From Paramicrosporidium saccamoebae KSL3 (lineage: Eukaryota; Fungi; Cryptomycota): 14,856 nt of DNA. The stretch lies in NCBI GenBank assembly GCA_002794465.1, contig MTSL01000195.1, positions 1,678 to 16,533 of the forward strand. The letters run 5' to 3'. The notes beneath the pieces are model-generated. The model saw only the letters and a program-made list of their open reading frames with translations. It was not told where the DNA came from and ran no database searches. Positions 430 to 14,856 of the stretch are shown one piece after another. Position 1 is the stretch's first letter. Each line of letters starts with the position of its first letter. Position numbers and translations under genes: made by a program.

Positions 430-2736
430 TTAATTGATGGTAAGAGTTAAGCAATATGCAAGATGAAGCCACGGCAGATGATACGTCTGGTTTAGCTTAA
501 TCGATAAGACATACATTACAATGAGGGCATTGTAATGCTTCTTGGTGCGGAACCTTTTAAAACGTGACATGAAGATTGTGACCAGCAGAATAATACTTTC
601 TATAGACCAACCCGGTCTCAACTCATTTTTGACGACTTGAGAAACGCCAATTTCTTGACTTAGGACCAGTATATTCCTTACTTGTGCAGACACGACAAGT
701 ATCGATCCAATGTTGGCAAGTACTGCCGTCAAGGGCATTTCACAGAGTGAAATGTAAAAGACGGCCAGTAGCCCGTTTCGTAATGAATCAGTGATTGGCA
801 AAAGTAGCATTATGAACATTGCAATCGAGGCCTGTCTCAACGACGGCCTTAAAGTCCACCACTCAGACGTACGATTCGCTGCTGCTATGAAGGCGGTGAT
901 ACTGAAGAGGAGTACGGCGTAAAGTGCAAGTTCCATCAGACTAGATTGGTGAATGATCCAAAATCTGCAAATCATCATTAGGGCGGTCCCCCAGGCCGAG
1001 AGGGAGCGCAGTGATGTAGATATCAAAAAAAGGCTGAGTAAGAGCTCCTGAGGATGGGAAATTACAATGGAGGTGAGAGTTTCAAGGAGATTAATCCGCA
1101 ATCGGGCATCTCTTACTTCTCCATTCGATGACACAAGCTCGACTATCATAGTATCTGGATAGATCGTGATAGATTTGTCCTCACCAGATGACAGGGTCGG
1201 AAAGTGCGCCCTACCTTTTTTATCAACGGCTCTAACCAAGACGGACTCATCGGCATGGATATTTAACACTACGGGCAGTGTCCAGTGCCCTCGTAAACTG
1301 ATGGCAGTTTGACCATTGGTCTGAAAAGACTGTGGCCATAATAAAGTGTCTAAACGTAAAGTCTCGTGATATGTGTCCTTTGATAAGGATAGGATCGTTG
1401 TTGACCTGGATGACTGTAAATCTTCAAAAGATTCATCTTGTATCTGAATATCCCAAACTTCAGGAGACATCCCAAACCGATTGTCCGAATCACACTTTAA
1501 TACCACCAGTAAGTCTCCAGCATGATTGCCGGATATCCTTGTAATGGTCTCGGTTAATTGTGTCCTGGCATTGGTGGTAGTGTCAAGACTATAGGTCCTC
1601 CCTGGATACTTTTGAATTACTAGTGCCGTGCTTCTGGGATCCTTAATCTGAATCTTGCCGCTTTGTTCTGAAATGTGGGATCCTATATGTATGCTGAATT
1701 GCTCGGGAAACTGTTCATTTGTGATGATTGAAAACGCTCCCTGGGCTTTTGTAATTATACACGCCGTTTTCTTTTCTAGGCCACAAACGTCACCATGAGT
1801 GAAATTGTCCTTGTAAAGAATGGTTTCACACTGGACCGCATTCGATAAGGTACTATCCACTTGAACTGAATCTTCGTCTAGCATTCTCCCGTAGCTGGAA
1901 TCATCGCTACCCAGGGCCAGTCGGAAAAGTTTGGCTAGCCTCTTTAAAAGTCCTCGCTCCCACACCATTGCTTGGTGGTTCGGATCTGACCAATTTGGGG
2001 ACAGCTGATCTACCCGGACCTCTTTAAAAACCTCTGGCAAAGGTGATATTTCTACTGGAACTAGGATGTCTGACGAACTAGGAAGCACAGAGATTGACCT
2101 ATCGAATCGGTGGTTTGAAATTTCCGTGTATAGAGTGTCCATTCTCCTGGTCGTGACTAGTGGCGCGCGCTTGTGCGGTGATGCAATAGTAACCAAGAAC
2201 GCCTGATGTTGCTGGAGTGCGTAATTTTTCAAATTCGGAAGCAGTCGAGCAATTATGCCTCCGAAGCTGTGTCCCACTAGACCAATGCTCTTTTTTGAAG
2301 GATACTCTGCCAGCAAAAATTGAAGGGCGTCATTGACATAGACAGACTGTTGCTCCAACAACCCAGGTAGAAATGCAACAAATTCTTGCCGAAAGTCTAC
2401 CGCAAAAAAATCATAGCAATCAACACCCGGTGAGGCGATGGTTGCCGAGGCAAAGCTGCGTACCTGCCGATAACTGCCAGAACACCCAGGGATAAATAGC
2501 ACAGGGAAGCATCCCGGCTGCTCGTTTCTTCCAAATTCATTATACTTGAATAGTCGGTATTTGTAAGAATACTCCGATACAACCTGACTAGAATAGTCCG
2601 TGTAGCCTGGCGCCATAATACTCATCTCGCATCGAATGCAACGTTTGCCTCGTCGGAGTACATTCAGCACTAACAATATGAGAAGGACTGAGCAGAGAGT
2701 AGAAAGTATAGAGCTTGCACGAACGATCCTGTTCAT
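430..2736 (-). CDS. BST1: GPI inositol-deacylase (PGAP1/Bst1 family), 768 aa, no intron needed
   Basis: N-terminal signal-anchor, then CEMSIMAPGY, PVLFIPGCSGSYRQVRS, DFFAVDF, lipase-type nucleophile motif LVGHSFGGIIAR and VTIASPH. Several C-terminal hydrophobic helices. This matches the PGAP1/Bst1 layout. Confidence 0.9.
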   Translation of the reverse strand: MNRIVRASSILSTLCSVLLILLVLNVLRRGKRCIRCEMSIMAPGYTDYSSQVVSEYSYKYRLFKYNEFGRNEQPGCFPVLFIPGCSGSYRQVRSFASATIASPGVDCYDFFAVDFRQEFVAFLPGLLEQQSVYVNDALQFLLAEYPSKKSIGLVGHSFGGIIARLLPNLKNYALQQHQAFLVTIASPHKRAPLVTTRRMDTLYTEISNHRFDRSISVLPSSSDILVPVEISPLPEVFKEVRVDQLSPNWSDPNHQAMVWERGLLKRLAKLFRLALGSDDSSYGRMLDEDSVQVDSTLSNAVQCETILYKDNFTHGDVCGLEKKTACIITKAQGAFSIITNEQFPEQFSIHIGSHISEQSGKIQIKDPRSTALVIQKYPGRTYSLDTTTNARTQLTETITRISGNHAGDLLVVLKCDSDNRFGMSPEVWDIQIQDESFEDLQSSRSTTILSLSKDTYHETLRLDTLLWPQSFQTNGQTAISLRGHWTLPVVLNIHADESVLVRAVDKKGRAHFPTLSSGEDKSITIYPDTMIVELVSSNGEVRDARLRINLLETLTSIVISHPQELLLSLFLISTSLRSLSAWGTALMMICRFWIIHQSSLMELALYAVLLFSITAFIAAANRTSEWWTLRPSLRQASIAMFIMLLLPITDSLRNGLLAVFYISLCEMPLTAVLANIGSILVVSAQVRNILVLSQEIGVSQVVKNELRPGWSIESIILLVTIFMSRFKRFRTKKHYNALIVMYVLSIKLNQTYHLPWLHLAYCLTLTIN

Positions 2737-3115
2737 AATTTACTGCATTGAGAATTGTGAGAGTGTATCTACAGGCCAGGGATTTGCTGGTGGACAGAGA
2801 TGCCCCTTTCAAATAAGTGATGTGAGCTTACAAGTAACGGCCCACGATTGAATCTCCAGTCCATAAATATACTACCTCAGCCGTGACACCTCGCCGCAAT
2901 CGATTAATCATCAACAAGCTGCCTAACGATGATTCCACCACACAGCAACTATCGCGATTGAGACTAGCAACCATAGGCGAATACTGCTCAACCGACTGTG
3001 CTAAACAGCATCCACTTGTCGCATAGTGGGGATAAATAGTATGGACTGTCAAGCGGGGAAGAGGGGTTTGTTCACTGCTAATCCTAGAATAGTATGGATG
3101 CACATCTCACTGTCC

Positions 3116-3217
3116 TCAAATACCCAGCAACTAATCAACCCTCTGCCTCTACGTCAAATACCCGACTAATCAATCCTCTGCCTCTACGTCAAATACCCAA
3201 CTAATCAGCCTTCTACG
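3116..3217. repeat. Degenerate tandem repeat, 3 units of 38/35/29 bp, intergenic
   Basis: 3116-3153 tcaaatacccagcaactaatcaaccctctgcctctacg; 3154-3188 tcaaatacccgactaatcaatcctctgcctctacg; 3189-3217 tcaaatacccaactaatcagccttctacg. Confidence 0.9.
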
Positions 3218-3379: not shown

Positions 3380-5629
3380 TCACAGCTGGTCTAATGTTTG
3401 GGAACGGCATCTTATAAAGGTGTAAACGCCCAACCCGAAGAGGGCGAGGCACGACAGTCCAGCTGCCGCAAAAAGGAGCAAAGTCTTCCAACCGAATGGA
3501 CTGGTGCTAATTCGAAGAGACACCAGATCACGCTGACTCGGCTTCATTTCAGCAAGGTAAGGTTTGAGTGCCTGGGCTGCAGTGCGATCCACTACAGCGC
3601 CCAGTGCTTCGATTTGTAGAGGCGAGAGAGATAGGGCAGCTTCCCTAGTTAGACAGGCAACTTGTTCATAGTCCCAATACTTTAAAGAATTATTGGGAAT
3701 GGCCTCGATCTGCAGGGCTCTCAAGCCACGAAATGCGTCAGATGGGATTTGTGGCCATTGCTTGATAGTTATGAGGGCTACCCTTTTGGGATCCCAGGTG
3801 GAAATGATTGACTTTTTCAGCAAGCTGAATGCATGCCTCTTCCCGGAACTAGTCTCTTTGGATACCGATTCCAAGTGGCTGTCGGGTATCGACTCCCATT
3901 TGAGCTCTCCAAAGGTGCTAGCACATAGTTTTGTCAATACGTCTGCAGGCATGGCCGAGATATCTGTACTCGTTATGACCTTTTTGACCTTTAGCTCTAG
4001 GAAGCAGTCTCTTGAAATTGACCCCTTCGCTCCCAGGGAAAGGAGCTTGAAGAATGTTGGACTCATATTTTTGCAAAACGACTCTTTGCTAACAAGGAGT
4101 TTCAAAATGTCAAACGTTATTAGAGGAACAATGTCACTCTGATGCTCGACTGTACCGCGAACAATATTGTCCATATTCTGGAGAACCCAGACACGAATAT
4201 TCTTTTTTCCCTCAGCATATCGGATTGTAAATTGGAGTGATTTAACACACTCCTCTGTCATATGATCTACAAACCATCTTTCCAGGAGCAGAGTAGCCGC
4301 ATTGGGTATCGAAGAACAGGCGTGATCGCTGCTTTCAGTGCTCAGATTCTTGATCAGAACAACAGAGTCCTTGCCAAGTACAGAGAGGACCTGGAATCCG
4401 CGCAAAACCTTTCCTTTCGTCTCCAATCTCCAATTTGACATCATCTGGTCATTCACCATTGCTAAAATGTCCGCTGGAGGAGACTTTATGCCCGCTATTA
4501 CCATGGGCTGCAGTGTGGTAGAGAGTTTGGAAAAGCAGCTTTTGTTAATCTTGACTGTAGATGATAGTTGCAGTTTCGCTCCGCGACTGATGTAGGAGCA
4601 CGCTTCCGACACCTGGAAGATATTGCCTAATAGTGTACCTCCGATATGCTTATAGTCATTAGAATGGATGCCTCTGATCAGTTTCGGATCAGATTTCAAT
4701 GTCATTCCGAGGATTGTACTACTGAAATGGCGCCACAGATCATTTAGGCTTGTAGGTCGCCCTTCATCGCTGGACTTTAAGTAGTTATGCAGGCACTTTT
4801 CGCCCAAGCCGGAAGCTGCAGTGGAAGACAGGTGCTCAATTTTCAATTTTAAGCAGACATTTGGCGAAGCTTCAAGCCTGCGGATCTGCTCTCGGGTAAT
4901 GTTAGAGACTGTGGGAGCAGTAAGAGGGCTGGATAGTTTTGTAAGGATGTCGTCACGAAAGCTTGACAAGTTTTCCATGTCAGTCCTTTGGATGTTCTTT
5001 AGCTTTGTGAAACATCTGGCAGTCACTAGTCTTCGGGTGGGTCCGTCAGCAATCTCATTAATTAGGGACGCATCGATATATTTGCAAATATTGGGATCGT
5101 CCAAGGCCGCTCTGGTCGCTTTGGCGCTCATTCCGAATAGCTCTTCCCCCATTTCCATTGCCAGTTGCGGATGGGTCTTGAAGATTTCCACAGGAAGCGC
5201 CTCTAACACGTGTTTTCGCTCCTTGGCCAGTCCTACCAGTTCTTGAGAGCAGCGATGGCGAGCATGAGAAAAACTAACAGGGTTAAGATTAATCCCAAGA
5301 CCAAGAAATAGACAAACGCCCTTCTTCCTGATGAGTTCCACATCTTCACGTCTGATATTGGAAAAAAATGTCTTGGCCACGCTAGCGTCTTTCCAGTTTG
5401 GAGAATGATCAGAATCTGCAGCAGATTCAATAAAATGTTCCATGAATTTTCTGGCATGGCGTGACTTCATTTTCCGAAAGAAATCGGCCGTATGCAAGTA
5501 CCAATTTTTGGGAGAAAACAGCTTTCCAGACAGGTCAAAGTTTTCCAGAAAAGCATTCTGATCTTTTTCAACATCAGCATACTCTCCATGCACAACACTC
5601 AAAAATGTGAGAAGAGGGAAGAGATTCAT
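3380..5629 (-). CDS. Orphan type I membrane (surface) protein with Cys-paired and 16-aa helical repeats, 749 aa
   Basis: Long open frame. The first ATG (5629; the track's GTG start at 5677 is a prokaryotic-style call) gives the signal peptide MNLFPLLTFLSVVHG-E. C-terminal TM segment WKTLLLFAAAGLSCLALFGLGVYTFI, then a short tail RCRSQTLDQL. I recognise no family. Confidence 0.8.
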   Translation of the reverse strand: MNLFPLLTFLSVVHGEYADVEKDQNAFLENFDLSGKLFSPKNWYLHTADFFRKMKSRHARKFMEHFIESAADSDHSPNWKDASVAKTFFSNIRREDVELIRKKGVCLFLGLGINLNPVSFSHARHRCSQELVGLAKERKHVLEALPVEIFKTHPQLAMEMGEELFGMSAKATRAALDDPNICKYIDASLINEIADGPTRRLVTARCFTKLKNIQRTDMENLSSFRDDILTKLSSPLTAPTVSNITREQIRRLEASPNVCLKLKIEHLSSTAASGLGEKCLHNYLKSSDEGRPTSLNDLWRHFSSTILGMTLKSDPKLIRGIHSNDYKHIGGTLLGNIFQVSEACSYISRGAKLQLSSTVKINKSCFSKLSTTLQPMVIAGIKSPPADILAMVNDQMMSNWRLETKGKVLRGFQVLSVLGKDSVVLIKNLSTESSDHACSSIPNAATLLLERWFVDHMTEECVKSLQFTIRYAEGKKNIRVWVLQNMDNIVRGTVEHQSDIVPLITFDILKLLVSKESFCKNMSPTFFKLLSLGAKGSISRDCFLELKVKKVITSTDISAMPADVLTKLCASTFGELKWESIPDSHLESVSKETSSGKRHAFSLLKKSIISTWDPKRVALITIKQWPQIPSDAFRGLRALQIEAIPNNSLKYWDYEQVACLTREAALSLSPLQIEALGAVVDRTAAQALKPYLAEMKPSQRDLVSLRISTSPFGWKTLLLFAAAGLSCLALFGLGVYTFIRCRSQTLDQL

Positions 5630-5761
5630 GCTGAAAAGTCGAGAGACCAATTGTTGAGAAACTGGTCCTACTACCACACCAGATCCGGGGGCTGATTTGG
5701 TGGCGATGAATGGCTGCCGGCGGATTAAGTTTATTTAATTTTTTTCATTTTCCGATACTAC

Positions 5762-6645: not shown

Positions 6646-6768
6646 CAAATTTGGATAGTGTGAGATTGGTAATAATGTTGCATGGTGGAATCTTTATCTT
6701 TAGCTTGTTAGTTGCACTATCTCACAGGTAGAGATGGCTTGCCACAGACCCCCCTACTCTACGAGGGC

Positions 6769-6775: not shown

Positions 6776-6847
6776 GGGCCACTCCGAGAATCGAACTCGG
6801 GACCTCTCGCACCCTAAGCGAGAATTATACCACTAAACCAAGTGGCC
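6776..6847 (-). tRNA. tRNA-Pro, anticodon AGG, 72 nt, no intron
   Basis: GGCCACTTGGTTTAGTGGTATAATTCTCGCTTAGGGTGCGAGAGGTCCCGAGTTCGATTCTCGGAGTGGCCC. Perfect 7-bp acceptor stem, anticodon arm CTCGC-TTAGGGT-GCGAG, T-loop TTCGATT, C73 discriminator, no encoded CCA. Confidence 0.97.
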
Positions 6848-7040: not shown

Positions 7041-8583
7041 ATGCTTGTCCCAATTGTCAGGTTACTGTCAAGAAAACATCTCTTGGCAACTGCTCGGCCC
7101 AATCCCTATTGGGGATCTTACTCGGGTGTTGTCTTACCTAAAAGGGAAATGCCCAATGATTGTTGTAAAGGCATGAGAGGCCCCAACTCTTCTTGGGTAG
7201 ACCTCGCTGACATGCCTTCCTCTGTCAATAATAGCATTCCTGTGGACCTTTTGAAAACCTTTAGGCAAAGCTTCAGGGCCAATCCTCAGAACCTTCTTGC
7301 AATGAACGCAATTAGCAACAACGACATGGCGTCAGTGATCCTCAACCGAGACCTCCCCATGGACACCTATCACGTGTACTCTGAGAAATTGGACACTGAG
7401 ACCAAGGTGACTAACCAGAAAGCCTCGGGCCGCTGTTGGCTTTTCGCGGCTATGAACGTCTTGCGTCTTGGGTTAATGAAACGTTACAATCTCGAAGAGT
7501 TTGAGTTTTCGCAGGCCTATCTCTTCTGGTTCGACAAATTAGAAAAGAGCAATTGGTTTCTTGAGAAAATCCTCAGCACTTTGGGAGAAGATCTTGATGG
7601 CCGCCTTATACAGTTTCTACTAAAGGACCCAGTGCAAGATGGCGGACAATGGGACATGGCCGTTAACCTTATCAACAAATACGGCCTCGTTCCGAAGAGT
7701 GTCTTTCCTGAGAGTGCTCACAGTGGAAATTCGCGTCAAATGAACTGGCTTATCACTGTCAAGCTCCGAGAATTTGCGCGTGAGCTGCGTCTGATGAACT
7801 CGAATGGCGTGCCCATGGAAGAAATACGCACCGCCAAAAACAAAATGTTAGGAGATATTTACACCATCTTGGCCGTCACAATGGGGGAACCACCAGTAAA
7901 ATTTGACTGGAATTTCCGTAACAAAGATAAGAAATTCCAGTCTTTCAAAGAACTAACTCCGCTTGTCTTTCTGAAAGAGCATGTTTCCAACGTCGTTTCC
8001 AATTCAGTCTCTCTCATCCATGATCCGCGACATGAGTATGGACAGTTATATACCGTCGAACACCTTGGAAATGTTGTTGGTGGCCAGCCCGTCCTCTATA
8101 TAAACCTGCCAATAGAAGAGCTGAAGAGAGTTGCCCTTGAAGCTCTCAAAGATAACAATTCAGTCTGGTTTGGATGTGATGTTGGAAAGTTCTGCAATCG
8201 CAAGGGCGGCGTTATGGATATTCAAATGTTTGATTACAAAAGTGCATTCGGAGTCGAATTGGGCTTGACCAAGGCTGACCGGCTTTATTACGGAGAAAGT
8301 ATGATGACGCATGCCATGGCTATTAACGGAGTTCATTTGGAAGAGAATGTACCCCTCAGATGGCGCATCGAGAATTCGTGGGGAGAGGACAATGGAGAAA
8401 AGGGATTTTATTGCATGACTGATGAATGGTTCACCGAGTATGTCTATCAGGTTGTGGTGGATGAAAAGTATCTGACAGATGAACAAGAAAAAATTCTGGA
8501 ACAAGAGCCTATTGCTCTTCCCCCTTGGGTACTGGATGTTATCACTACTAAATCTGTAGGATCCTCTTGGAGCGCTCGCTTGA
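7041..8583 (+). CDS. LAP3: Bleomycin hydrolase / cysteine aminopeptidase (peptidase C1B), 2 exons (7041 or 7212..8528; 8560..8583), 503 or 446 aa
   Basis: Catalytic motifs NQKASGRCWLFA (Cys), MTHAM (His) and IENSWG (Asn). Splicing gives the family C-terminus PIALPPW-DPLGALA*. The 568-aa track ORF is the unspliced read-through. Confidence 0.92.
8529..8559 (+). other. LAP3 intron, 31 nt, GT-AG, phase 0
   Basis: gtactggatgttatcactactaaatctgtag, with CTAA at -12..-9. The exon after it encodes DPLGALA*. Confidence 0.9.
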
Positions 8584-8591
8584 ATGGAACT

Positions 8592-8597
8592 AATAAA
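8592..8597 (+). promoter_or_regulatory. Putative polyadenylation signal AATAAA of LAP3
   Basis: 8 nt after the spliced stop TGA (8581-8583); independently supports the spliced model. Confidence 0.55.
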
Positions 8598-8746
8598 AAC
8601 TGCTATTGCGCGGCTGATAGGATGCGATTAATGAACACGCTTATGAACTACTATGCGGATATGGAACATGATGTAACGAGTAAGACATGGCCACAAGACA
8701 ATATGACGAACCAATACTCCGATGAAAAGAATAAAGGCTATTTTTG

Positions 8747-9349
8747 ATGAAAGAGGAGAGTTTTGCCAAGCTTTTTCGGGTGTCGAAATTTGTGCAATTT
8801 GACCCAAAGATTCAACGTATCTACAAAGCATCTGCCCTACCACCCACCGCTTCTACTAAAAAGATAACACCTACAGACCAGCGACCTTCCTTTTACGGCT
8901 TCAAAAGTGACCTTCATCCCACATACTATGGTCGTAAATTGGGGCATGTGCAAATGACGAAACTGGATGGACACTATGGTTTGTGCACTATGCGCAATGG
9001 CGCCGACAAGCTTTTAATGTTTACTGTTTTGAATGAATTACAGCGGCTATTGGGAACTGGCCCTTCTGATGGAATCCAGCAGTCGACCTGGAGCGACTTT
9101 AGCCATCGTCCGACAATGTGCAAGCAGGGCGTGCGTGTTCCCGGGCGGGTCTTGAACCGTTTAGATACCGGATATGCGATCGGCATCGGCGGCATTGTGG
9201 CTGAGCTACCCAGCTCCGAGATTCCACCAATGCAACATTTTTCGAGGAGTGATATAGCGGGACGGAAAGCCTTTTACTTTTATGTGAAGCAGGCCGAGTT
9301 TGGCAAGGATGGACGTCCAAAAGTAGTTGTATCACTAAAGGCACAATAA
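8747..9349 (+). CDS. MRP51: Probable mitochondrial small-subunit ribosomal protein bS1m (Mrp51-like), 200 aa
   Basis: N-terminal SFAKLFRVSKFVQFDPKIQRIY...YGFKSDL resembles my recollection of the fungal Mrp51 N-terminal motif (F..LLR.S.F..FDP.I.Q.Y...GLKR.LP). C-terminal S1-like segment VPGRVLN...GYAIGIGGIVAELP. ATG at 8747. Recognised by eye only. Confidence 0.62.
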   Translation: MKEESFAKLFRVSKFVQFDPKIQRIYKASALPPTASTKKITPTDQRPSFYGFKSDLHPTYYGRKLGHVQMTKLDGHYGLCTMRNGADKLLMFTVLNELQRLLGTGPSDGIQQSTWSDFSHRPTMCKQGVRVPGRVLNRLDTGYAIGIGGIVAELPSSEIPPMQHFSRSDIAGRKAFYFYVKQAEFGKDGRPKVVVSLKAQ

Positions 9350-9448: not shown

Positions 9449-10714
9449 CTATTTAGGACCAAATTTTGTCTCCAGGACTCTTGGGCCTTGTTCTTCCCAT
9501 TCACGTTTGGTGATCCAAAATGCTTCATTATCTTTCATCAAGTCAGCCAAGACTGATCCTCCCATAAAGACCATGTGTTTGCGCTTTGGCGGATCTTCAA
9601 TTCTCATTTTGAACTTTGACTGGCGTGTCGTGTCACCTTGCAATACACGATCAAGGTATAGCTTTTTCATGTCGTTCTCAAGACGAGTAGGCAGTCCTGG
9701 ATACATGGTTGTGCCTCCGGAGAGAACAATGTGTTTGTACAAATCTGCCCGTAAATCTACATCGGCTCCATTGATGGCCAAAAAGAGCTGCTCGGATAAT
9801 CCCGGACACTCCTTGTCAATCAGATGGGGCTGAAATAGAATTTCGGGGGCTTCGAATCGCTCCGACCCTACTTTGATGGTACGACCATCCGGTAGCGTAT
9901 AATCTTTCATCAGAACAGTAGTCTCGACTGCAAGCTTTCGCTCCAACTCGAGATCAGCACTCACATAGCAAAGCTTTTCCTTAATTTCACGCACCGTTTC
10001 AAAGTCGGCGGTGCTATTGAAAGAATATCCGCGATGAAAGAGAAGTTTGATCATTTGCCGTGTGATATCGCGTCCAGCTATATCAAGTCTCTTGATTAAA
10101 TGCGGCATGGAGTAGCCATCAAACACTGGAACAATGTGCGTCACTCCGTCACCAGAGTCAACTACGACTCCACTCTGAAGGCCTACAAATTCAAATATCA
10201 TTGGCCCTTTTACCTTGAGCGTACAATGTCAGTACAGCCTGCACTCCGACGTACACCCCTTCAAATCCAAAATGTTCAAACATTGTGGCAACCATTTTCT
10301 CGCGATTCTTCTTTGGGTTCAGCGGCGGCTCCGTAAGCAGAATTTTGTGCTCTTGCGGATTGACGCCCAGACACTCCTTAAACGTGTGTTCCCATAACAG
10401 CTCCATGTCGTCCCAATTTTGGATGATCCCATTTTCCATCGGATGGGACACGTCCAAGTAAGAGCGGTACTTTAGTACATCGTCGCCGTACATGACATCT
10501 TTTAGAGCAGACAGGACGCTATCGGAGCCCAAAGTCGTGCCACGCCTATTGTTTGCGCGGATGACTGGTCGTCCGAGAACGCTGGGAAAGACGGCCGCAG
10601 GAAAGTTGGACTTGCTAAAGCCACATTTTACAAACTAAATATTCAGACGGGAAGAGAGACGGGTACTCCGGTGCCATTGTCACATATAATAACCGGTTTG
10701 CTATCTGGAATCAT
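9449..10714 (-). CDS. ARP2: Actin-related protein 2 (Arp2/3 complex), 3 exons (10714-10667, 10634-10214, 10182-9449), 400 aa
   Basis: Spliced frame: [16 protein letters not shown]|[12 protein letters not shown]...[14 protein letters not shown]...LLTEPPLNP...VLTLYAQ|[16 protein letters not shown]...[24 protein letters not shown]. These are Arp2-type rather than actin-type motifs. Confidence 0.95.
10183..10213 (-). other. ARP2 intron 2, 31 nt, GT-AG, phase 1
   Basis: gtaaaagggccaatgatatttgaatttgtag joins the two track ORFs at YAQ-G|GC-L. Confidence 0.92.
10635..10666 (-). other. ARP2 intron 1, 32 nt, GT-AG, phase 0
   Basis: gtacccgtctctcttcccgtctgaatatttag joins DNGTG to FVKCG. Confidence 0.92.
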
Positions 10715-10865
10715 CCGTCCCTAAACGATTTTTGCTTTTCGCATAAACAGCTGTGGCTGTTCATCAAAACTGCCAAATCAATTGCGTATAGTGTGATCAT
10801 CTATGAGTGTTCCATAAGTAATGTATTGCGAAGCTATTAATACGTGCTAATTTACAGCCCAGTTC

Positions 10866-11725
10866 ATGAAACTCGACCTTGTTTGGGCAGTTATCCTCGG
10901 GACTGTGCATTCAGAGGCTTGCAACGGGTATCCAGCCGCAAATTGCAATGGTAATCATATAATCTATGGGCAAATCAACTGTTAGATTTGGTGGAGTTTG
11001 ATACTAGAATTCAGACTGTCATTCCCCGCATAATTAACGAGGGAGATTACGTCATTCGTGAATTTGACGGGATTTTGGATAAGGACCCACAAGAATTCTA
11101 CTTTGATGGAGTCGGCGTCGAGGCCGATCGTCGGTTCAAACTATCTGGCCATCCGGTGATCAAAGTCGACATTACTGATGGCTTCAACTTGGGCGATTCC
11201 TTTATTGTTTATGCCAACAATGAGCTCGCGGCAGTGAGTCCCATCCCAGAGACGCGGAAAGATTTGTTCGTCCCAAACTACGAATCTGCCAGATCGGATC
11301 TCCGTTTCAGCAGCGCTCAAATTGTACTCACTAAGCCCTGCACCCTCCGCATATTCACACGTGCTGCTCCTTATGGCATGGGTGCAGGCTACATTAAAGC
11401 CAGATCAGTCCGCACGTGTGATTTTGCAAAATTTGGTTTTTTTCTGATTTCGACCACACTGGAACGCCACAATGCAGACCTTGCATGTGCAGCTCATGGC
11501 GGAGCACTGGCGCTCATAAAGGATGCGCTGGACGCAAAAAAAGCACGCTACGTGCTTGATCGGTGTCTCGGTGGAGAGGTGCAGAGTGCTTGGATTGGAT
11601 CCTATAAAAATCACAAAGAAGGACCACTAAGCATTTCCAGCTTCCCTGAATACTCAGGACTTAGGCAGGGAGTAGTACTTGCCGACTACAGCAGCCGATC
11701 ACTACCCGTCTTGTGCTCAATATAG
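10866..11725 (+). CDS. Secreted orphan protein: beta-rich N-terminal domain plus C-type-lectin-like domain, 2 exons (10866-10950, 10986-11725), 274 aa
   Basis: A missed first exon gives the signal peptide MKLDLVWAVILGTVHS-EACNG, spliced in phase to the 245-aa track ORF. The C-terminal part shows CTLD hallmarks: A..AC..HGGALALI, AWIGSY and terminal LPVLC. Confidence 0.75.
10951..10985 (+). other. Intron, 35 nt, GT-AG, phase 1, in the secreted orphan gene
   Basis: gtaatcatataatctatgggcaaatcaactgttag. Unspliced reading stops at the acceptor TAG; splicing joins CN-G|AT-LVEF. Confidence 0.8.
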
Positions 11726-11928
11726 ATATAAAGCCCTTTGCCAAGCAATTTATTATTATGTAAAGTAGTGGAATGTTTAGCTGGGCCCTGGGTGCTGGGT
11801 GTTTGTGCAGATATATAGAAAGGAGAATCGGAGGCAAGGGACGAAACAATCAACTCTAACGTTTGAACACTATGCTGGCGAGTCCATACCAACTGGCGAT
11901 AAACATTTCCCTGCCGTCCATTTAAACA

Positions 11929-11934
11929 TTTATT
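11929..11934 (-). promoter_or_regulatory. Putative polyadenylation signal AATAAA of APT1
   Basis: tttatt on the plus strand, immediately after the tandem hairpin repeat. Confidence 0.5.
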
Positions 11935-11936
11935 GC

Positions 11937-12006
11937 CACCGTGGTGGTGCTCCCACCACGCAACAGTTATGACACCGTGGTAATACGCCCACCACGCGAC
12001 AATTAT
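11937..12006 (-). repeat. Two 34-bp direct repeats (36-bp period), each an 8-bp hairpin, in the APT1 3' UTR
   Basis: Plus strand caccgtggtggtgctcccaccacgcaacagttat (11937-11970) and caccgtggtaatacgcccaccacgcgacaattat (11973-12006), 28/34 identical. Confidence 0.88.
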
Positions 12007-12792
12007 AATTCAGTCTTTTCTGGAATCGCCAGACAACCATTGATAAATTCGACAACGTCTGCAATTTCCTCCTCACACGAACTGTGCTGCATTCCTTCGT
12101 AGCTCTTGGCAGTGATACGAGCCCCACCAAGCTGTCGGAGGAATTCTACGCTCTTTCTATGCCAGCTGTATTGGACTACAAAGTCTGCAGTCCCGTGGCC
12201 AGCAAACACAGGCGTAGTTAGCGGATGAGGAGGGAGGGACTTTATCAGTTTTCGACACGGAATGTAACCAGAAAGGGCGATTATGCCACCAAGCTTGATA
12301 TCCGGATGTACTAATGCGGTGAATAACGAAGTTGCAGCGCCCTGAGAGAAGCCGCCGATGAAGATGCGTTCATTTGGGATGCCTGCTGCCTGCTCCACCT
12401 TTACGTAATCGAGCAGGGCATTTGCAGATTTCTGCAAGCCTGTTTCGTCTTCATTTTCATCAGTATCACTCAGTGTGTAGATATCATACCAAGCCGGCAT
12501 CTTCATTCCGCTATTCAGTGTCACCGGAATCTGTGGCGCGTGGGGACAAATAAATTTCATGAAACGGAATTTCTTGGATAGTTGGCGCATAACGGGTGCC
12601 CACCCATGGCCTGAATCTCCAAGACCATGAAGAAATATGAATGAGGCTGTGTGCTGGACAGCTGCTTCAATGATTATTGGAGTGGATGCAAGCATTCCAA
12701 TATGAGCCCCTGTCAGATCGTGGTGACTGATCAATTGTTATGTGGTGAGAGTATTGTCACGAGGTGGGAAATATGCCAAAGCACAGACACAT
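12003..12792 (-). CDS. APT1: Acyl-protein thioesterase 1 / lysophospholipase. Safe core from ATG 12695 (230 aa); tentative extra 5' exon 12792-12761 (251 aa)
   Basis: IFLHGLGDSGHGW, KFICPHAP..PVTLNSGMKMPAWYDI, nucleophile GGFSQGAA, GHGTADFVV (Asp) and YEGMQHSSC (His): the LYPLA/APT family. Confidence 0.92.
12727..12760 (-). other. Tentative APT1 intron, 34 nt, GT-AG, phase 2
   Basis: gtgacaatactctcaccacataacaattgatcag joins MCLCFGIFPT-TC|T-HHDLTG in the correct phase and removes in-frame stops. The donor is weaker and the branch motif is not at -9. Confidence 0.45.
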
Positions 12793-13060
12793 TGGATAGT
12801 CAACTTTTCTGTCCCTCGCCTCTGCCGTCTTTCACTTCCGACCCTTCGCTCCAAATTTGGGCATATGGCAACAAATACCCAGCTGGTCATCCCATTACTT
12901 TATAAATAATTAAACGGCGACCTATTTACAGTAGCTATGAAAGCACTTGTAATGGAGAGGGAGTGAAATTTCGCACATGCGCCTATATAGAACTGAATAT
13001 GATTGAAATAAATGTTTATGGTCGACTTCACCAGCCCCGGCAATCGTCCAATTCTCTATA

Positions 13061-14856
13061 ATGGACCAAGGCCAGACCATTGCGCCGAGCTCATCGCGTA
13101 TTCGGCGGTTAGAACGGATGACAGCCGACTATTGGCGACAAATGACTAGGACTGGTGGCGCCTATGTTCCGCCAAAGCGCATGTCGACAGAGACACAGCA
13201 GCTGCCAGACCGGGAGAGTGAAGCGTTTCAGAGGTTGAGCTGGGATGCGCTTCGTCGCTCACTTAACGGTCTCATCAACAAGGTCAATGGTTCAAACATC
13301 AAAAAAATTGTAGAAGAACTCATTGGAGAAAATTTGATCAGAGGACGGGGTCTCTTCTGTCGTTCCATCATGAAGGCACAAGCGGCCTCAATGATTTATA
13401 CACCAGTTTACGCAGCAGTTGTGGCCGTTCTGAACACCAAATTCCCACTTTTGGGCGAGCTGCTAGCGACACGGCTAGTTTCGCAATTTAGACGCTCTTA
13501 TAGAAGGAATGACAAGCTACAGTGCCTAGCCGCGACCACCTTTATTTCCCATCTTGTAAATCAGCATGTCCTGCATGACATTTGCGCCTTGCAAATGCTG
13601 ATGCTCCTTCTGGATCGTCCAACAGACGACAGTGTGGAGATTGCGGTGGGGTTGATGAAGGAGGTGGGTGCCGCCCTGAGTGAGCTATCGCCAAAGCCAA
13701 CAAACGCAGTTTTTGAACGCTTCCGTGCCGTCTTACATGAGGGCGTCATTGACAAAAGGGTTCAATATATGATTGAAGTGCTTTTCCAAACTCGCAAGGA
13801 CAAGTTTAAAGATAATGTTGCTATTCCTCCCGCACTAGATCTCGTTGAGGAAGAGGATCAAATCAGCCACTATATAATGCTGGACGATAAACTTGATACT
13901 CAAGATGGGACAAATATTTTTAAATTTGATGAAGAATTTACCCAACACGAGGACGAGTATGAAGCAATCAAGATGGAAATCCTCGGCAATGAAGAGGATG
14001 AAGAAGAGGAAGACGAGGTGGTCGAAGAGGAAGAAGAAAAAGGCGCTATCCACGACAAAACTGATACCAATCTGATCAATTTCAGAAAAACTGTCTACTT
14101 GACAATCATGTCGAGTTTGGACTTTGAAGAATGTGGACACAAGATTTTAAAGATGAACATGCCCCCCGATTTTGAAATTGAGCTGTGCCACATGATTGTG
14201 GAATGCTCCTCAAATGAGCGCAATTATCTAAAATTCTTTGGTCTGCTTGCAGAACGCTTTTGTAAAATTGATCCAATTTGGAGGGAAAATTTTGAGAGGT
14301 GCTTTGTAGAAGTTTATTCCACTGCGCATCGCCTGGAAACCAACAAGATTAGAAATGTTTCAAAGCTGTTTGGGCACTTGTTTGAATCTGACGCCATCAC
14401 CTGGGCTGTCCTTGAATGTGTTCGTCTGACAGAGGAGGATACCACAGCTGCGGGGCGTATCTTTATCAAATTCTTGTTCCAGGATCTTGCCGAATTTTAT
14501 GGGATACCCAAGCTTCACGAGCGTCTTTCCGATGCCGAATTCCAGCCGTACTTTGAAGGCATCTTCCCATCTGATGATGCTGCCCACTTGCGTTTCAGTG
14601 TCAACTATTTTACTGCGATTGGATTGGGTGGGCTAACTGAAGAAATGCGAGATCGACTCAAAATTATCCAATCATCCTTGATTGATACGTCCAAACCAAC
14701 CGTGCTTGCTCAATCAAGACGTGCAATTGAACCCCCGAGTCCACAGTCGCCAAGGCACCGTAGTCGCTCAAGGTCACCAAGACGTCAGAGGCATTCAAGG
14801 TCGCCAAGGCGCTGTAGTCGCTCAAGGTCACCAAGACGTCGTAGTCGCTCAAGATC
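13061..14856 (+). CDS. CWC22: Pre-mRNA-splicing factor Cwc22 (MIF4G + MA3 domains, RS-rich tail); runs off the right edge
   Basis: Stop-free frame from ATG 13061 (alternative ATGs at 13118 and 13142): RTGGAYVPP, FQRLSWDALRRSLNGLINKVN, ENLIRGRGLFCRSIMKAQ, acidic linker, KTVYLTIMSSLDFEECGHK, HRLETNKIRN, RFSVNYFTAIGLGGLTEEMR. Not in the ORF track because there is no stop in the window. Confidence 0.95.
   Translation, partial: MDQGQTIAPSSSRIRRLERMTADYWRQMTRTGGAYVPPKRMSTETQQLPDRESEAFQRLSWDALRRSLNGLINKVNGSNIKKIVEELIGENLIRGRGLFCRSIMKAQAASMIYTPVYAAVVAVLNTKFPLLGELLATRLVSQFRRSYRRNDKLQCLAATTFISHLVNQHVLHDICALQMLMLLLDRPTDDSVEIAVGLMKEVGAALSELSPKPTNAVFERFRAVLHEGVIDKRVQYMIEVLFQTRKDKFKDNVAIPPALDLVEEEDQISHYIMLDDKLDTQDGTNIFKFDEEFTQHEDEYEAIKMEILGNEEDEEEEDEVVEEEEEKGAIHDKTDTNLINFRKTVYLTIMSSLDFEECGHKILKMNMPPDFEIELCHMIVECSSNERNYLKFFGLLAERFCKIDPIWRENFERCFVEVYSTAHRLETNKIRNVSKLFGHLFESDAITWAVLECVRLTEEDTTAAGRIFIKFLFQDLAEFYGIPKLHERLSDAEFQPYFEGIFPSDDAAHLRFSVNYFTAIGLGGLTEEMRDRLKIIQSSLIDTSKPTVLAQSRRAIEPPSPQSPRHRSRSRSPRRQRHSRSPRRCSRSRSPRRRSRSR
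14747..14854 (+). repeat. Coding tandem repeat, at least 4 x 27 nt (A-B-A-B, 54-nt higher order), encoding an RS/SPRR domain of Cwc22
   Basis: tcgccaaggcaccgtagtcgctcaagg / tcaccaagacgtcagaggcattcaagg / tcgccaaggcgctgtagtcgctcaagg / tcaccaagacgtcgtagtcgctcaaga = SPRHRSRSR, SPRRQRHSR, SPRRCSRSR, SPRRRSRSR. Confidence 0.92.

What the first reader, a model, noticed from the sequence alone, without database searches (positions are those of the whole stretch)
11940..11996. Tandem stem-loops in the APT1 3' UTR conserved only on the mRNA strand, with GNRNA pentaloops
Seen: on the minus (APT1 mRNA) strand, starting 6 nt after the UAA stop, are CGUGGUGG-GCGUA-UUACCACG (11996-11976) and CGUGGUGG-GAGCA-CCACCACG (11960-11940), 36 nt apart and followed by AAUAAA (11934-11929). 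The only two stem differences are C/U changes opposite G. These keep an 8-bp stem through G-U pairs on the mRNA strand but give A-C mismatches on the other strand. Two further differences fall in the loop and keep G-N-R-N-A. Known: GNR(N)A pentaloops adopt a GNRA-like fold with one extruded base and bind proteins (e.g. lambda boxB). Inference: a duplicated cis-acting RNA element (stability, localisation, translation or 3'-end control) in a genome whose other 3' UTRs look minimal. Caveat: two transitions compatible with wobble pairing can arise by chance.
Basis: partly seen in the sequence, partly recalled or inferred. Interest (0 to 1): 0.7.

Follow-up and report, generated by a model that had tools for sequence, protein, structure and literature searches.

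The report
Locally duplicated hairpin unit flanking APT1
The two stem-loops after the APT1 gene of the amoeba parasite Paramicrosporidium saccamoebae are real, but they are tandem copies of a 36-base palindromic unit that also lies inverted just upstream of the gene and is absent from relatives, so they look like a young local duplication, not a proven regulatory RNA.

Summary
On the minus strand, UAA is followed after 6 nt by CGUGGUGG-GCGUA-UUACCACG, then by CGUGGUGG-GAGCA-CCACCACG, then by AAUAAA. The window is Paramicrosporidium saccamoebae scaffold MTSL01000195.1.

- **Origin.** The two hairpins are copies of a 36-nt tandem repeat (29/36 identical) whose first triplet is the stop codon.
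- **Third copy.** A diverged copy (26/36) lies on the opposite strand, 36 nt upstream of the APT1 ATG. A second collinear inverted block (29/37) lies 108-148 nt further out on each side.
- **Relatives.** Six syntenic relatives have neither the hairpins, nor a structured 3' flank, nor the inverted flanks.
- **Fold.** At equilibrium the predicted fold is one nested, cross-paired helix (P about 0.99), not two tandem hairpins, so the pentaloops would not be displayed.
- **Chance.** One perfect 8-bp hairpin is within chance for this window.
- **Pairing.** All 24 stem pairs in the three copies stay paired on the unit's own strand. One pair reads A-U, G-U and G-C. A neutral simulation reproduces this in 0.6-3% of runs.

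Verdict: a lineage-specific tandem-plus-inverted duplication, probably carried in the 3' UTR. Function is possible but unproven. Copies elsewhere in the genome could not be counted here.

The parts
11970..12005 (-). Unit copy 1 (gene-proximal). It starts with the APT1 stop codon TAA and contains hairpin 1 at 11976-11996 (CGUGGUGG-GCGUA-UUACCACG, with two G-U pairs).
11934..11969 (-). Unit copy 2. It starts with an in-frame TAA and contains hairpin 2 at 11940-11960 (CGUGGUGG-GAGCA-CCACCACG, all Watson-Crick pairs).
11925..11933 (-). Partial third tandem unit (TAAATGTTT, compare TAACTGTTG). It overlaps the first poly(A)-type hexamer AATAAA at 11929-11934.
12732..12769 (+). Unit copy 3, diverged and in the opposite orientation, 36 nt upstream of the APT1 ATG. 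Its hairpin is at 12741-12761 (UGUGGUGA-GAGUA-UUGUCACG). All 8 pairs form only on the + strand, 4 of them G-U.
11749..11785 (-). Distal block L (CCCAGCTAAACATTCCACTACTTTACATAATAATAAA). It contains the second AATAAA at 11754-11749.
12878..12914 (+). Distal block R (CCCAGCTGGTCATCCCATTACTTTATAAATAATTAAA). It is 29/37 identical to block L, inverted and collinear with unit copy 3, and contains TATAAA and ATTAAA.
12003..12695 (-). APT1 (acyl-protein thioesterase, Abhydrolase_2) coding sequence, 230 aa. It is bracketed by the outward-facing units.

Best explanation
The stem-loops are copies of a 36-bp unit built around a (GGT)n/(ACC)n-type palindrome. The unit was multiplied locally in the Paramicrosporidium saccamoebae lineage.

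- It is copied head-to-tail (2.2 copies) directly after the APT1 stop codon.
- It is copied once in inverted orientation 36 nt upstream of the APT1 start codon, together with a second ~37-nt A/T-rich block further out.
- The likeliest origin is replication slippage and fold-back or template switching at the palindrome (inferred).
- The two downstream copies are carried in the APT1 3' UTR, because the first AAUAAA follows them (inferred from sequence).
- There they should fold into one long irregular cross-paired helix of about -36 kcal/mol, ending at the poly(A) signal (predicted).

On this reading the structure is a passenger with at most a modest, unselected or weakly selected effect on the end of the message. 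It is not a conserved, 3' UTR-specific, protein-binding pentaloop element.
For: - The tandem repeat has period 36, 29/36 identity, and TAANTGTT at each unit start.
- The stem has 3-nt periodicity, so registers slid by 3 nt still pair at 75-88%.
- The third, inverted copy scores 18.7 bits with a model built from only the two 3' UTR copies. A sequence-only scan gives 26/36, against null maxima of 21.5 +/- 0.8 and a maximum of 25 in 300 dinucleotide shuffles.
- A collinear second inverted block matches 29/37. Its targeted score is 19.5 against a null of 11 +/- 1.4, maximum 16.5.
- Inverted flank homology has z = 5.7 in the window and z between -1.7 and +1.1 in six relatives.
- The orthologous 3' flanks are unstructured, z -1.4 to +0.6 against -4.55 here.
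- No further copy turns up in 75 kb of the window plus relatives.
- Another 35-nt minisatellite sits in a different spacer of the same window, so such duplications are ordinary here.
- A single 8-bp hairpin is within chance.
- c1 against c2 is compatible with neutrality, 6-14%.
- The genome paper reports only 0.53% repeats.
Against: - All 24 stem pairs in the three copies remain standard pairs on the unit's own strand, and the closing pair runs A-U, G-U, G-C.
- Random placement of the observed substitutions reproduces this in only 0.6-3% of simulations; for copy 3 alone the figure is 8-18%.
- The spacers between the unit and the distal block have almost lost similarity. Their local score is 14.5, p = 0.03, against about 52 expected if they had diverged like the blocks. 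This suggests the unit and the distal block are constrained.
- The genome is compact and other genes have AATAAA 8-28 nt after the stop, so about 70 nt of useless extra 3' UTR is somewhat unexpected.
Confidence: 0.45

Rival explanations
1. A functional, strand-specific RNA module. Each module is a hairpin followed 110-150 nt later by an A/T-rich block with a poly(A)-type hexamer. It works as a 3'-end, termination or stability cassette, and one module faces outward on each side of APT1. The downstream module ends the APT1 mRNA before it runs into the convergent gene PSACC_03166. The upstream module stops plus-strand transcripts that leave the APT1 body (read-through from PSACC_03166 or divergent promoter transcripts) before they reach the MIF4G/MA3 gene.
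For: - Pairing is preserved on the outward-reading strand in all three copies, including an AU/GU/GC series.
- The unit and the distal block are conserved while the spacer between them is not.
- AAUAAA lies 5 nt after hairpin 2 and again in distal block L. ATTAAA lies in distal block R.
- It is the strongest local structure of the window.
- Leaky AAUAAA recognition and transcriptional overrun are documented in the related microsporidian E. cuniculi (PMC2803860).
Against: - No transcript data were available, and plus-strand transcription across 12732-12769 is hypothetical.
- The other convergent pair in the window (MRP51-like and ARP, 99-nt spacer) has no such module.
- The module is absent in six relatives.
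- The statistics rest on three 36-nt copies and are post hoc.
- Copy 3 is a weak hairpin (-7.7 kcal/mol, and the minimum-energy fold does not form the full stem).
Confidence: 0.25
2. One reading: a 3' UTR-specific cis-acting element whose two GNRNA pentaloops are bound by a protein, as in lambda boxB, to control stability, localisation or translation of APT1 mRNA.
For: - All three loops fit G-N-R-N-A: GCGUA, GAGCA, GAGUA.
- GNRNA pentaloops are a recognised GNRA-like fold (PMC9830547).
- The hairpins lie between the stop codon and AAUAAA.
Against: - The tandem-hairpin conformation has a predicted probability of about 0.005, against about 0.99 for the nested fold, in which these pentamers are internal loops.
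- GNRNA has only about 5 bits of information, and the loops share G, R and A by descent.
- The third copy is not in a 3' UTR and is antisense to APT1.
- There is no conservation in orthologues.
- Hairpin 1 starts 6 nt after the stop codon. On textbook knowledge of the ribosome footprint, it lies inside the mRNA channel of a terminating ribosome and must be melted at each termination.
Confidence: 0.08
3. A short non-autonomous mobile element (MITE-like or foldback) that inserted on both sides of APT1 and is dispersed elsewhere in the genome.
For: - Copies occur in both orientations in gene-flanking DNA.
- The unit has a palindromic core.
- A 12-mer of the region next to distal block R (CAAATACCCAGC) recurs in the 35-nt minisatellite at 3116-3214.
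Against: - No terminal inverted repeats or target-site duplications were found at the arm borders.
- No other copy exists in the window's other spacers or in relatives.
- The published repeat content is 0.53%, mostly simple repeats.
- The similarity runs a few bases into the end of the APT1 coding sequence (GACTGA). That fits duplication of the gene's own 3' flank better than an insertion.
Confidence: 0.1
4. A double-stranded DNA palindrome bound by a dimeric protein that marks both borders of the APT1 gene, for example a boundary or fork-barrier site.
For: Sites lie at both ends of one gene, and copy 2 is a perfect palindrome.
Against: As DNA, the palindrome has decayed to 6/8 pairs in copy 1 and 4/8 in copy 3, while pairing with G-U is kept at 8/8 on one strand only. 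That pattern is the opposite of what a duplex binding site predicts.
Confidence: 0.04

Closest known systems
Minisatellite-type tandem duplication by replication slippage, and palindrome-driven inverted duplication by fold-back or template switching
   Same: - Head-to-tail copies of constant period (36 nt, 2.2 copies).
- Short homology (TAANTGTT) at the unit borders.
- A palindromic, trinucleotide-periodic core.
- A further inverted copy nearby.
- A second 35-nt minisatellite in the same window.
   Different: The inverted copy is about 730 nt away on the other side of a gene. Only two short blocks of the arms remain similar, which is not expected from simple neutral decay.
GNRNA pentaloop hairpins such as lambda boxB, bound by the N peptide
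   Same: A 5-nt loop fitting G-N-R-N-A on a G+C-rich stem, in all three copies.
   Different: - The stem is 8 bp here. boxB has 5 bp (from my own knowledge).
- No cognate protein is known.
- The loops are not predicted to be displayed, because the nested fold dominates.
- The host is a eukaryote.
- The loop consensus carries very little information.
Hairpin-dependent 3'-end formation: the Mimivirus 'hairpin rule', bacterial intrinsic terminators and the histone mRNA stem-loop (all from my own knowledge, not tested here)
   Same: A stable palindromic hairpin lies at the end of a transcription unit, in the spacer between convergent genes.
   Different: - A canonical AAUAAA follows the hairpins here.
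- Other genes of the window have AAUAAA without hairpins.
- There is no U-run after the stem.
- The loop and stem do not fit the histone stem-loop (6-bp stem, 4-nt loop).
- Rfam has no match.
MITEs and foldback elements
   Same: Short, palindrome-containing, gene-flanking, found in both orientations.
   Different: No terminal inverted repeats or target-site duplications were found. Only local copies were seen. The published repeat content of this genome is very low.
Stem-loops that stimulate stop-codon read-through, placed 5-9 nt after the stop (from my own knowledge)
   Same: The hairpin starts 6 nt after UAA, and the 36-nt period keeps the reading frame.
   Different: In-frame UAA codons follow after 11 and then 14 further codons. 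There is no conserved extension. The C-terminus (..EL, then stop) aligns with those of the orthologues.

Membership tests
GNRNA pentaloop protein-binding hairpin (boxB-like) | Five-nucleotide loop with the consensus G-N-R-N-A closing a helix | tested here: met
   GCGUA, GAGCA and GAGUA in the three copies. The consensus is low in information and partly shared by descent.
GNRNA pentaloop protein-binding hairpin (boxB-like) | The pentamer is actually displayed as a hairpin loop in the folded RNA | tested here: not met
   Local hairpin pairs have P about 0.005 and nested arm1-arm4 / arm2-arm3 pairs P about 0.99. The fold constrained to tandem hairpins is -33.4 kcal/mol, against -36.2 for the minimum-energy fold. 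This is an equilibrium prediction only; co-transcriptional folding was not modelled.
GNRNA pentaloop protein-binding hairpin (boxB-like) | GNRA-like fold with the fourth base extruded, and a cognate binding protein | not testable with these tools
   Needs NMR or SHAPE and a pull-down.
Conserved 3' UTR cis-regulatory RNA element | Lies inside the mature transcript, between the stop codon and the poly(A) site | tested here: inconclusive
   The first AATAAA is 69 nt after the stop and 5 nt after hairpin 2, with none upstream of it. No RNA data were available.
Conserved 3' UTR cis-regulatory RNA element | Structure conserved at the orthologous locus in relatives | tested here: not met
   Six syntenic loci (L002, L063-L067) have z between -1.4 and +0.6, against -4.55 in the window, and none has the motif. 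These relatives are distant (54-63% protein identity), so the test is weak.
Conserved 3' UTR cis-regulatory RNA element | Covariation supporting the helix | tested here: inconclusive
   Three paralogous copies give 24/24 cells paired, 4 pairs changed on one side and 1 pair changed on both sides. The shuffle control is uninformative with three sequences. The neutral simulation gives 0.6-3%.
Conserved 3' UTR cis-regulatory RNA element | Recurs in other 3' UTRs in sense orientation | tested here: not met
   In 14.9 kb, none of the other six ORF ends checked has it. The only other copy is antisense and upstream of the APT1 ATG. A genome-wide test was not possible.
Slippage-type tandem duplication (minisatellite) | Head-to-tail copies of constant period with short homology at the unit borders | tested here: met
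   Period 36, 2.2 copies, 80% matches. Successive units start TAATTGTCG, TAACTGTTG, TAAATGTTT.
MITE or dispersed mobile element | Terminal inverted repeats and target-site duplications at the element ends | tested here: not met
   None found at the borders of either arm.
MITE or dispersed mobile element | Many dispersed copies in the genome | not testable with these tools
   Only this 16.5-kb scaffold of the genome could be reached. There are no copies in the window's other spacers. The metagenome scan gave only unrelated bacterial coding matches.
Any described RNA family (Rfam 15) | Match at or near the family's gathering score | tested here: not met
   Only tRNA-Pro passes in the window. Nothing overlaps the hairpins even at E up to 10.
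Read-through-stimulating 3' structure | Open, conserved in-frame extension after a leaky stop codon | tested here: not met
   In-frame UAA codons at 11969-11967 and 11924-11922. The stop position is shared with the orthologues.

The most novel reading that the evidence does not exclude
The 36-nt hairpin plus the A/T-rich block 110-150 nt further out form a strand-specific 'transcript-end cassette'. One cassette faces outward on each side of APT1. The hairpin would be kept by selection at the RNA level, through A-U, G-U and G-C exchanges. The cassettes would insulate tightly packed neighbouring genes from sense and antisense read-through in a compact parasite genome with leaky polyadenylation.
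Probability: 0.12. Interest if true: 0.6.

Novelty: new member of a known kind. Interest (0 to 1): 0.27.

Why it matters
If the hairpin unit is only a slippage and inverted-duplication product, it is a small example of how palindromes create new spacer DNA even in a streamlined 7-Mb parasite genome, and it needs no further attention. If the pair-preserving changes and the block-wise conservation reflect selection, it would be the first hint of structured RNA signals at transcript ends in the Rozellomycota-Microsporidia lineage, where 3'-end formation is known to be sloppy and neighbouring genes collide. The public genome and RNA-seq data can separate the two readings in an afternoon.

Tried and rejected
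1. **More of the genome.** I tried to reach other P. saccamoebae scaffolds through paralogues of lineage-specific proteins. ORF 3380-5677 had no hit at all. ORF 10988-11725 hit only its own gene model, PSACC_03166. A genome-wide count of the motif was therefore impossible.
2. **Metagenome scan.** A scan with CGTGGTGGGNRNAYYACCACG gave 60 single matches. All have flanks unrelated to the window's; most lie in high-G+C contigs, and several groups share near-identical flanks and look like bacterial coding sequence. None is tandem.
3. **Rfam.** Nothing at gathering or relaxed thresholds.
4. **Similar sequence at 6668-6688.** A 19/21 match to the spacer plus 5' arm has no 3' arm and was rejected as chance.
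5. **Local alignment with +2/-3 scoring.** It did not separate copy 3 from noise. An identity scan and the covariance model did.
6. **Mobile-element ends.** No TIR or TSD around PSACC_03166 or the arms.
7. **Insertion of PSACC_03166.** I first thought this gene was a P. saccamoebae-specific insertion. That was rejected, because a homologue also lies convergent to APT1 in L067.
8. **5'-3' UTR panhandle.** A hypothetical 5' leader pairing with the 3' UTR gains little over the self-folds: cofold -54.4 against -46.4 kcal/mol.
9. **Read-through stimulator.** Rejected because of the in-frame stops.
10. **Small plus-strand ORF 12702-12905** covering copy 3. Treated as a chance ORF.
11. **Weak SNORD111 hit** (E 3.2). 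Treated as chance.

Full report
**Source and context.** The APT1 protein of the window is encoded on NCBI record MTSL01000195.1 of assembly GCA_002794465.1; the window is bases 1678-16533 of that record. The accession MTSL00000000 belongs to Paramicrosporidium saccamoebae, an intranuclear rozellid parasite of amoebae (PMC5701793). A neighbouring gene model is named PSACC_03166 [Paramicrosporidium saccamoebae]. The gene called APT1 is a 230-aa Abhydrolase_2 protein (E 1.5e-62) at 12695-12003 on the minus strand. Downstream, and convergent with it, is an ORF on the plus strand ending at 11725 (part of PSACC_03166). Upstream, and divergent from it, is a MIF4G/MA3 gene starting at 13061.

**Checking the observation.** On the minus strand the sequence reads TAA (12005-12003), ttgtcg, CGTGGTGG-GCGTA-TTACCACG (11996-11976), 15 nt, CGTGGTGG-GAGCA-CCACCACG (11960-11940), gtggc, AATAAA (11934-11929).
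- Hairpin 1 needs two G-U pairs. It folds at -9.0 kcal/mol on the mRNA strand, but only as a 6-bp stem (-6.1) on the other strand. Hairpin 2 is a perfect palindrome.
- The region is the most stable 70-nt stretch of the window on either strand, -34.6 kcal/mol against a mean of -12.8, sd 4.3.

**The two hairpins are not independent.** They are two copies of a 36-nt tandem repeat: 11970-12005 and 11934-11969, 29/36 identical, with a TRF array of 2.2 copies at 11925-12006.
- The first triplet of each unit is TAA, and in copy 1 that is the APT1 stop codon.
- The stem is trinucleotide-periodic (GTGGTGG / CCACCAC), so registers slid by 3 nt still pair at 75-88%.
- One perfect 8-bp hairpin is within chance here: 3 distinct ones in the window against 1.6 hits expected.
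- If 7 random substitutions are put into a duplicate, both stems stay intact on the mRNA strand in 6-14% of simulations, and in 3-8% if GNRNA is also required.
- There is no double (compensatory) change between the two copies.

The four arms are mutually complementary, and the minimum-energy structure is a nested helix: arm 1 pairs with arm 4 and arm 2 with arm 3. It is -36 to -37.5 kcal/mol, with pair probabilities of about 0.99. The local tandem hairpins have a probability of about 0.005. In the nested fold GCGUA and GAGCA are internal loops, so the pentaloop argument depends on an unproven kinetic fold. GNRNA pentaloops are a recognised GNRA-like motif (PMC9830547), but the consensus carries little information.

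**Is it in the mRNA?** Other ORF ends in the window have AATAAA 8 nt (ARP), 28 nt (ORF 3380-5677) and 134 nt (BST1) after the stop. APT1 has it at +69, right after hairpin 2, and again at +249. AAUAAA close to the stop codon is also the rule in the related microsporidian E. cuniculi (PMC2803860). Inclusion of the hairpins in the 3' UTR is therefore likely, but it is inferred.

**Relatives.** APT1 homologues at 54-63% identity lie on contigs with the same gene order (MIF4G/MA3, APT1, ARP, MRP51-like, bleomycin hydrolase, PGAP1), so these loci are true orthologues.
- In six such loci the 70 nt after the stop are unstructured, with z from -1.4 to +0.6 against -4.55 in the window.
- None contains the motif.
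- These relatives are distant, so this rules out deep conservation only.

**New finding 1: a third copy on the other strand.** A covariance model built from the two copies found 12732-12769 on the plus strand at 18.7 bits, E about 0.04 for 150 kb (rough).
- A sequence-only scan gives 26/36 identities. The next best place in the window has 21-22. The maxima of 300 dinucleotide shuffles are 21.5 +/- 0.8, never above 25.
- The copy lies 36 nt upstream of the APT1 ATG and points away from the gene.
- Its hairpin, UGUGGUGA-GAGUA-UUGUCACG, keeps 8/8 pairs only on its own (plus) strand, four of them G-U.

**New finding 2: a second inverted block.** 11785-11749 (minus) and 12878-12914 (plus) are 29/37 identical, collinear with the units and in the same inverted orientation. 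The targeted score is 19.5 against a null of 11 +/- 1.4, maximum 16.5. In an all-against-all BLAST of the window the E-value is 0.25 and the hit ties for second among non-self matches.
- APT1 is thus bracketed by outward-facing arms made of a hairpin unit, a spacer and an A/T-rich block.
- The spacers (148 and 108 nt) are barely similar: global z = 1.0, local p = 0.03, and a score of 14.5 where about 52 is expected if they had diverged like the blocks.
- Inverted flank similarity is specific to this species, with z = 5.7 against -1.7 to +1.1 in six relatives.
- Neither a profile HMM of the two aligned arms nor the three-copy covariance model finds anything else in 75 kb.

**What the three copies say about selection.** On the unit's own strand all 24 stem cells are standard pairs. 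Five of eight pairs vary, and the closing pair is A-U, G-U and G-C in the three copies.
- With copy 3 as outgroup, the G-U pairs of hairpin 1 are ancestral and the G-C pairs of hairpin 2 are derived.
- Substitutions are not rarer in stems (6 of 14), but all six preserve pairing.
- Random placement of the observed numbers of substitutions does this in 0.6-3% of simulations, and in 0.1-0.9% if GNRNA must also hold.
- This is suggestive, post hoc and based on three short sequences.
- As duplex DNA the palindrome has decayed to 6/8 and 4/8 pairs, which speaks against a double-stranded binding site.

**Interpretation.** Shown: a lineage-specific local multiplication, tandem and inverted, of a palindromic unit. 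Inferred: an origin by slippage and fold-back template switching, and presence of the downstream copies in the APT1 3' UTR. I commit to the passenger reading at 0.45.
- The main rival (0.25) is that the unit and the distal block are constrained and act as outward-facing transcript-end modules.
- A dispersed mobile element gets 0.10. It is untestable here, and the published repeat content is 0.53%.
- A duplex DNA site gets 0.04.

**What could not be done.** I also had no access to the RNA-seq reads.

Noticed in passing
window 6776-6847 (-): A tRNA-Pro(AGG) gene lies in the long spacer between ORF 3380-5677 and the bleomycin-hydrolase gene. It is the only Rfam hit of the window at gathering score (57.3 bits).
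   Followed up: partly
window 3116-3214 (+): A second minisatellite (35-nt unit, 2.7 copies, 87% matches) sits in the spacer between BST1/PGAP1 and ORF 3380-5677. Its unit shares the 12-mer CAAATACCCAGC with the region next to distal block R (12872-12883). A CCCTCTGCCTC-like stretch resembles 12811-12826 by eye; that similarity was not tested.
   Followed up: partly
window 14746-14853 (+): Four copies of a 27-nt (9-codon) repeat at the end of the window. Most of it lies inside the annotated MIF4G/MA3 gene (13061-14817), and it runs 36 nt past that gene's end.
   Followed up: no
window 9449-11725: The GenBank gene models look wrong here. The ARP (actin-related) gene starts at ATG 10713 ([16 protein letters not shown]) and has a short intron after the first exon (roughly 30 nt, read by eye). 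It probably has another near 10191-10201. It is annotated only as a 201-aa fragment. PSACC_03166 (405 aa, 10100-11725, + strand) runs over the ARP exons on the other strand. Its real start is probably the signal-peptide-like exon at ATG 10866.
   Followed up: partly
window 10988-11725 (+) and L067 10724-11482 (-): The ORF convergent with APT1 has no Pfam domain and no hit in 5.8 billion proteins except its own model. Yet it is 27% identical (E 2e-17, pairwise) to the gene that is also convergent with APT1 in L067 (GCA_020047435.1). This is a conserved gene pair. By eye its C-terminal half looks like a C-type lectin fold, which was not tested.
   Followed up: partly
C-termini of APT1 orthologues (window 12003-12017; L002, L064-L067): The APT1 proteins of this clade end in ER-retrieval-like tetrapeptides: KTEL, HDEL, LSEL, SSEL, KDDL, KDSL. 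No signal peptide was obvious by eye in the window's protein.
   Followed up: no
L063 985-1120, L064 7568-7710, L066 10730-10850: The short APT1-ARP spacer of three relatives holds a strongly conserved motif, TTAAACYGCCATYGGRCATT, which in L064 and L066 is followed by TTACTAAC (a branch-point-like sequence). No copy was seen by eye in the window's ARP upstream sequence.
   Followed up: no
window 13007-13018 (+): The 12-mer AATAAATGTTTA that follows hairpin 2 on the minus strand (11934-11923) recurs exactly on the plus strand, 43 nt upstream of the MIF4G/MA3 ATG and about 90 nt beyond distal block R.
   Followed up: no
window 3380-5677 (-): A 765-aa ORF appears by eye to have a signal-peptide-like start and a C-terminal hydrophobic stretch. 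It has no Pfam domain and no homologue at E <= 0.001 in the 5.8-billion-protein collection. The GenBank model seems to merge this region with the PGAP1 gene into one 1964-aa product.
   Followed up: partly
window 7041-9349 (+): The bleomycin-hydrolase ORF (Peptidase_C1_2, residues 67-496) runs on past its domain into an implausible tail and overlaps an MRP51-like ORF (8744-9349). GenBank merges the two into one 744-aa model. An unannotated intron after ...ALPPW seems likely.
   Followed up: no
window 514-537, 706-775 and 2961-3030: Other strong local structures. A perfect 10-bp palindrome (CATTACAATG-AGGG-CATTGTAATG) and a stretch with z about -4.7 both lie inside the 3' part of the BST1/PGAP1 coding sequence. 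A third stretch, with z about -4.6, lies in the spacer upstream of that gene.
   Followed up: no
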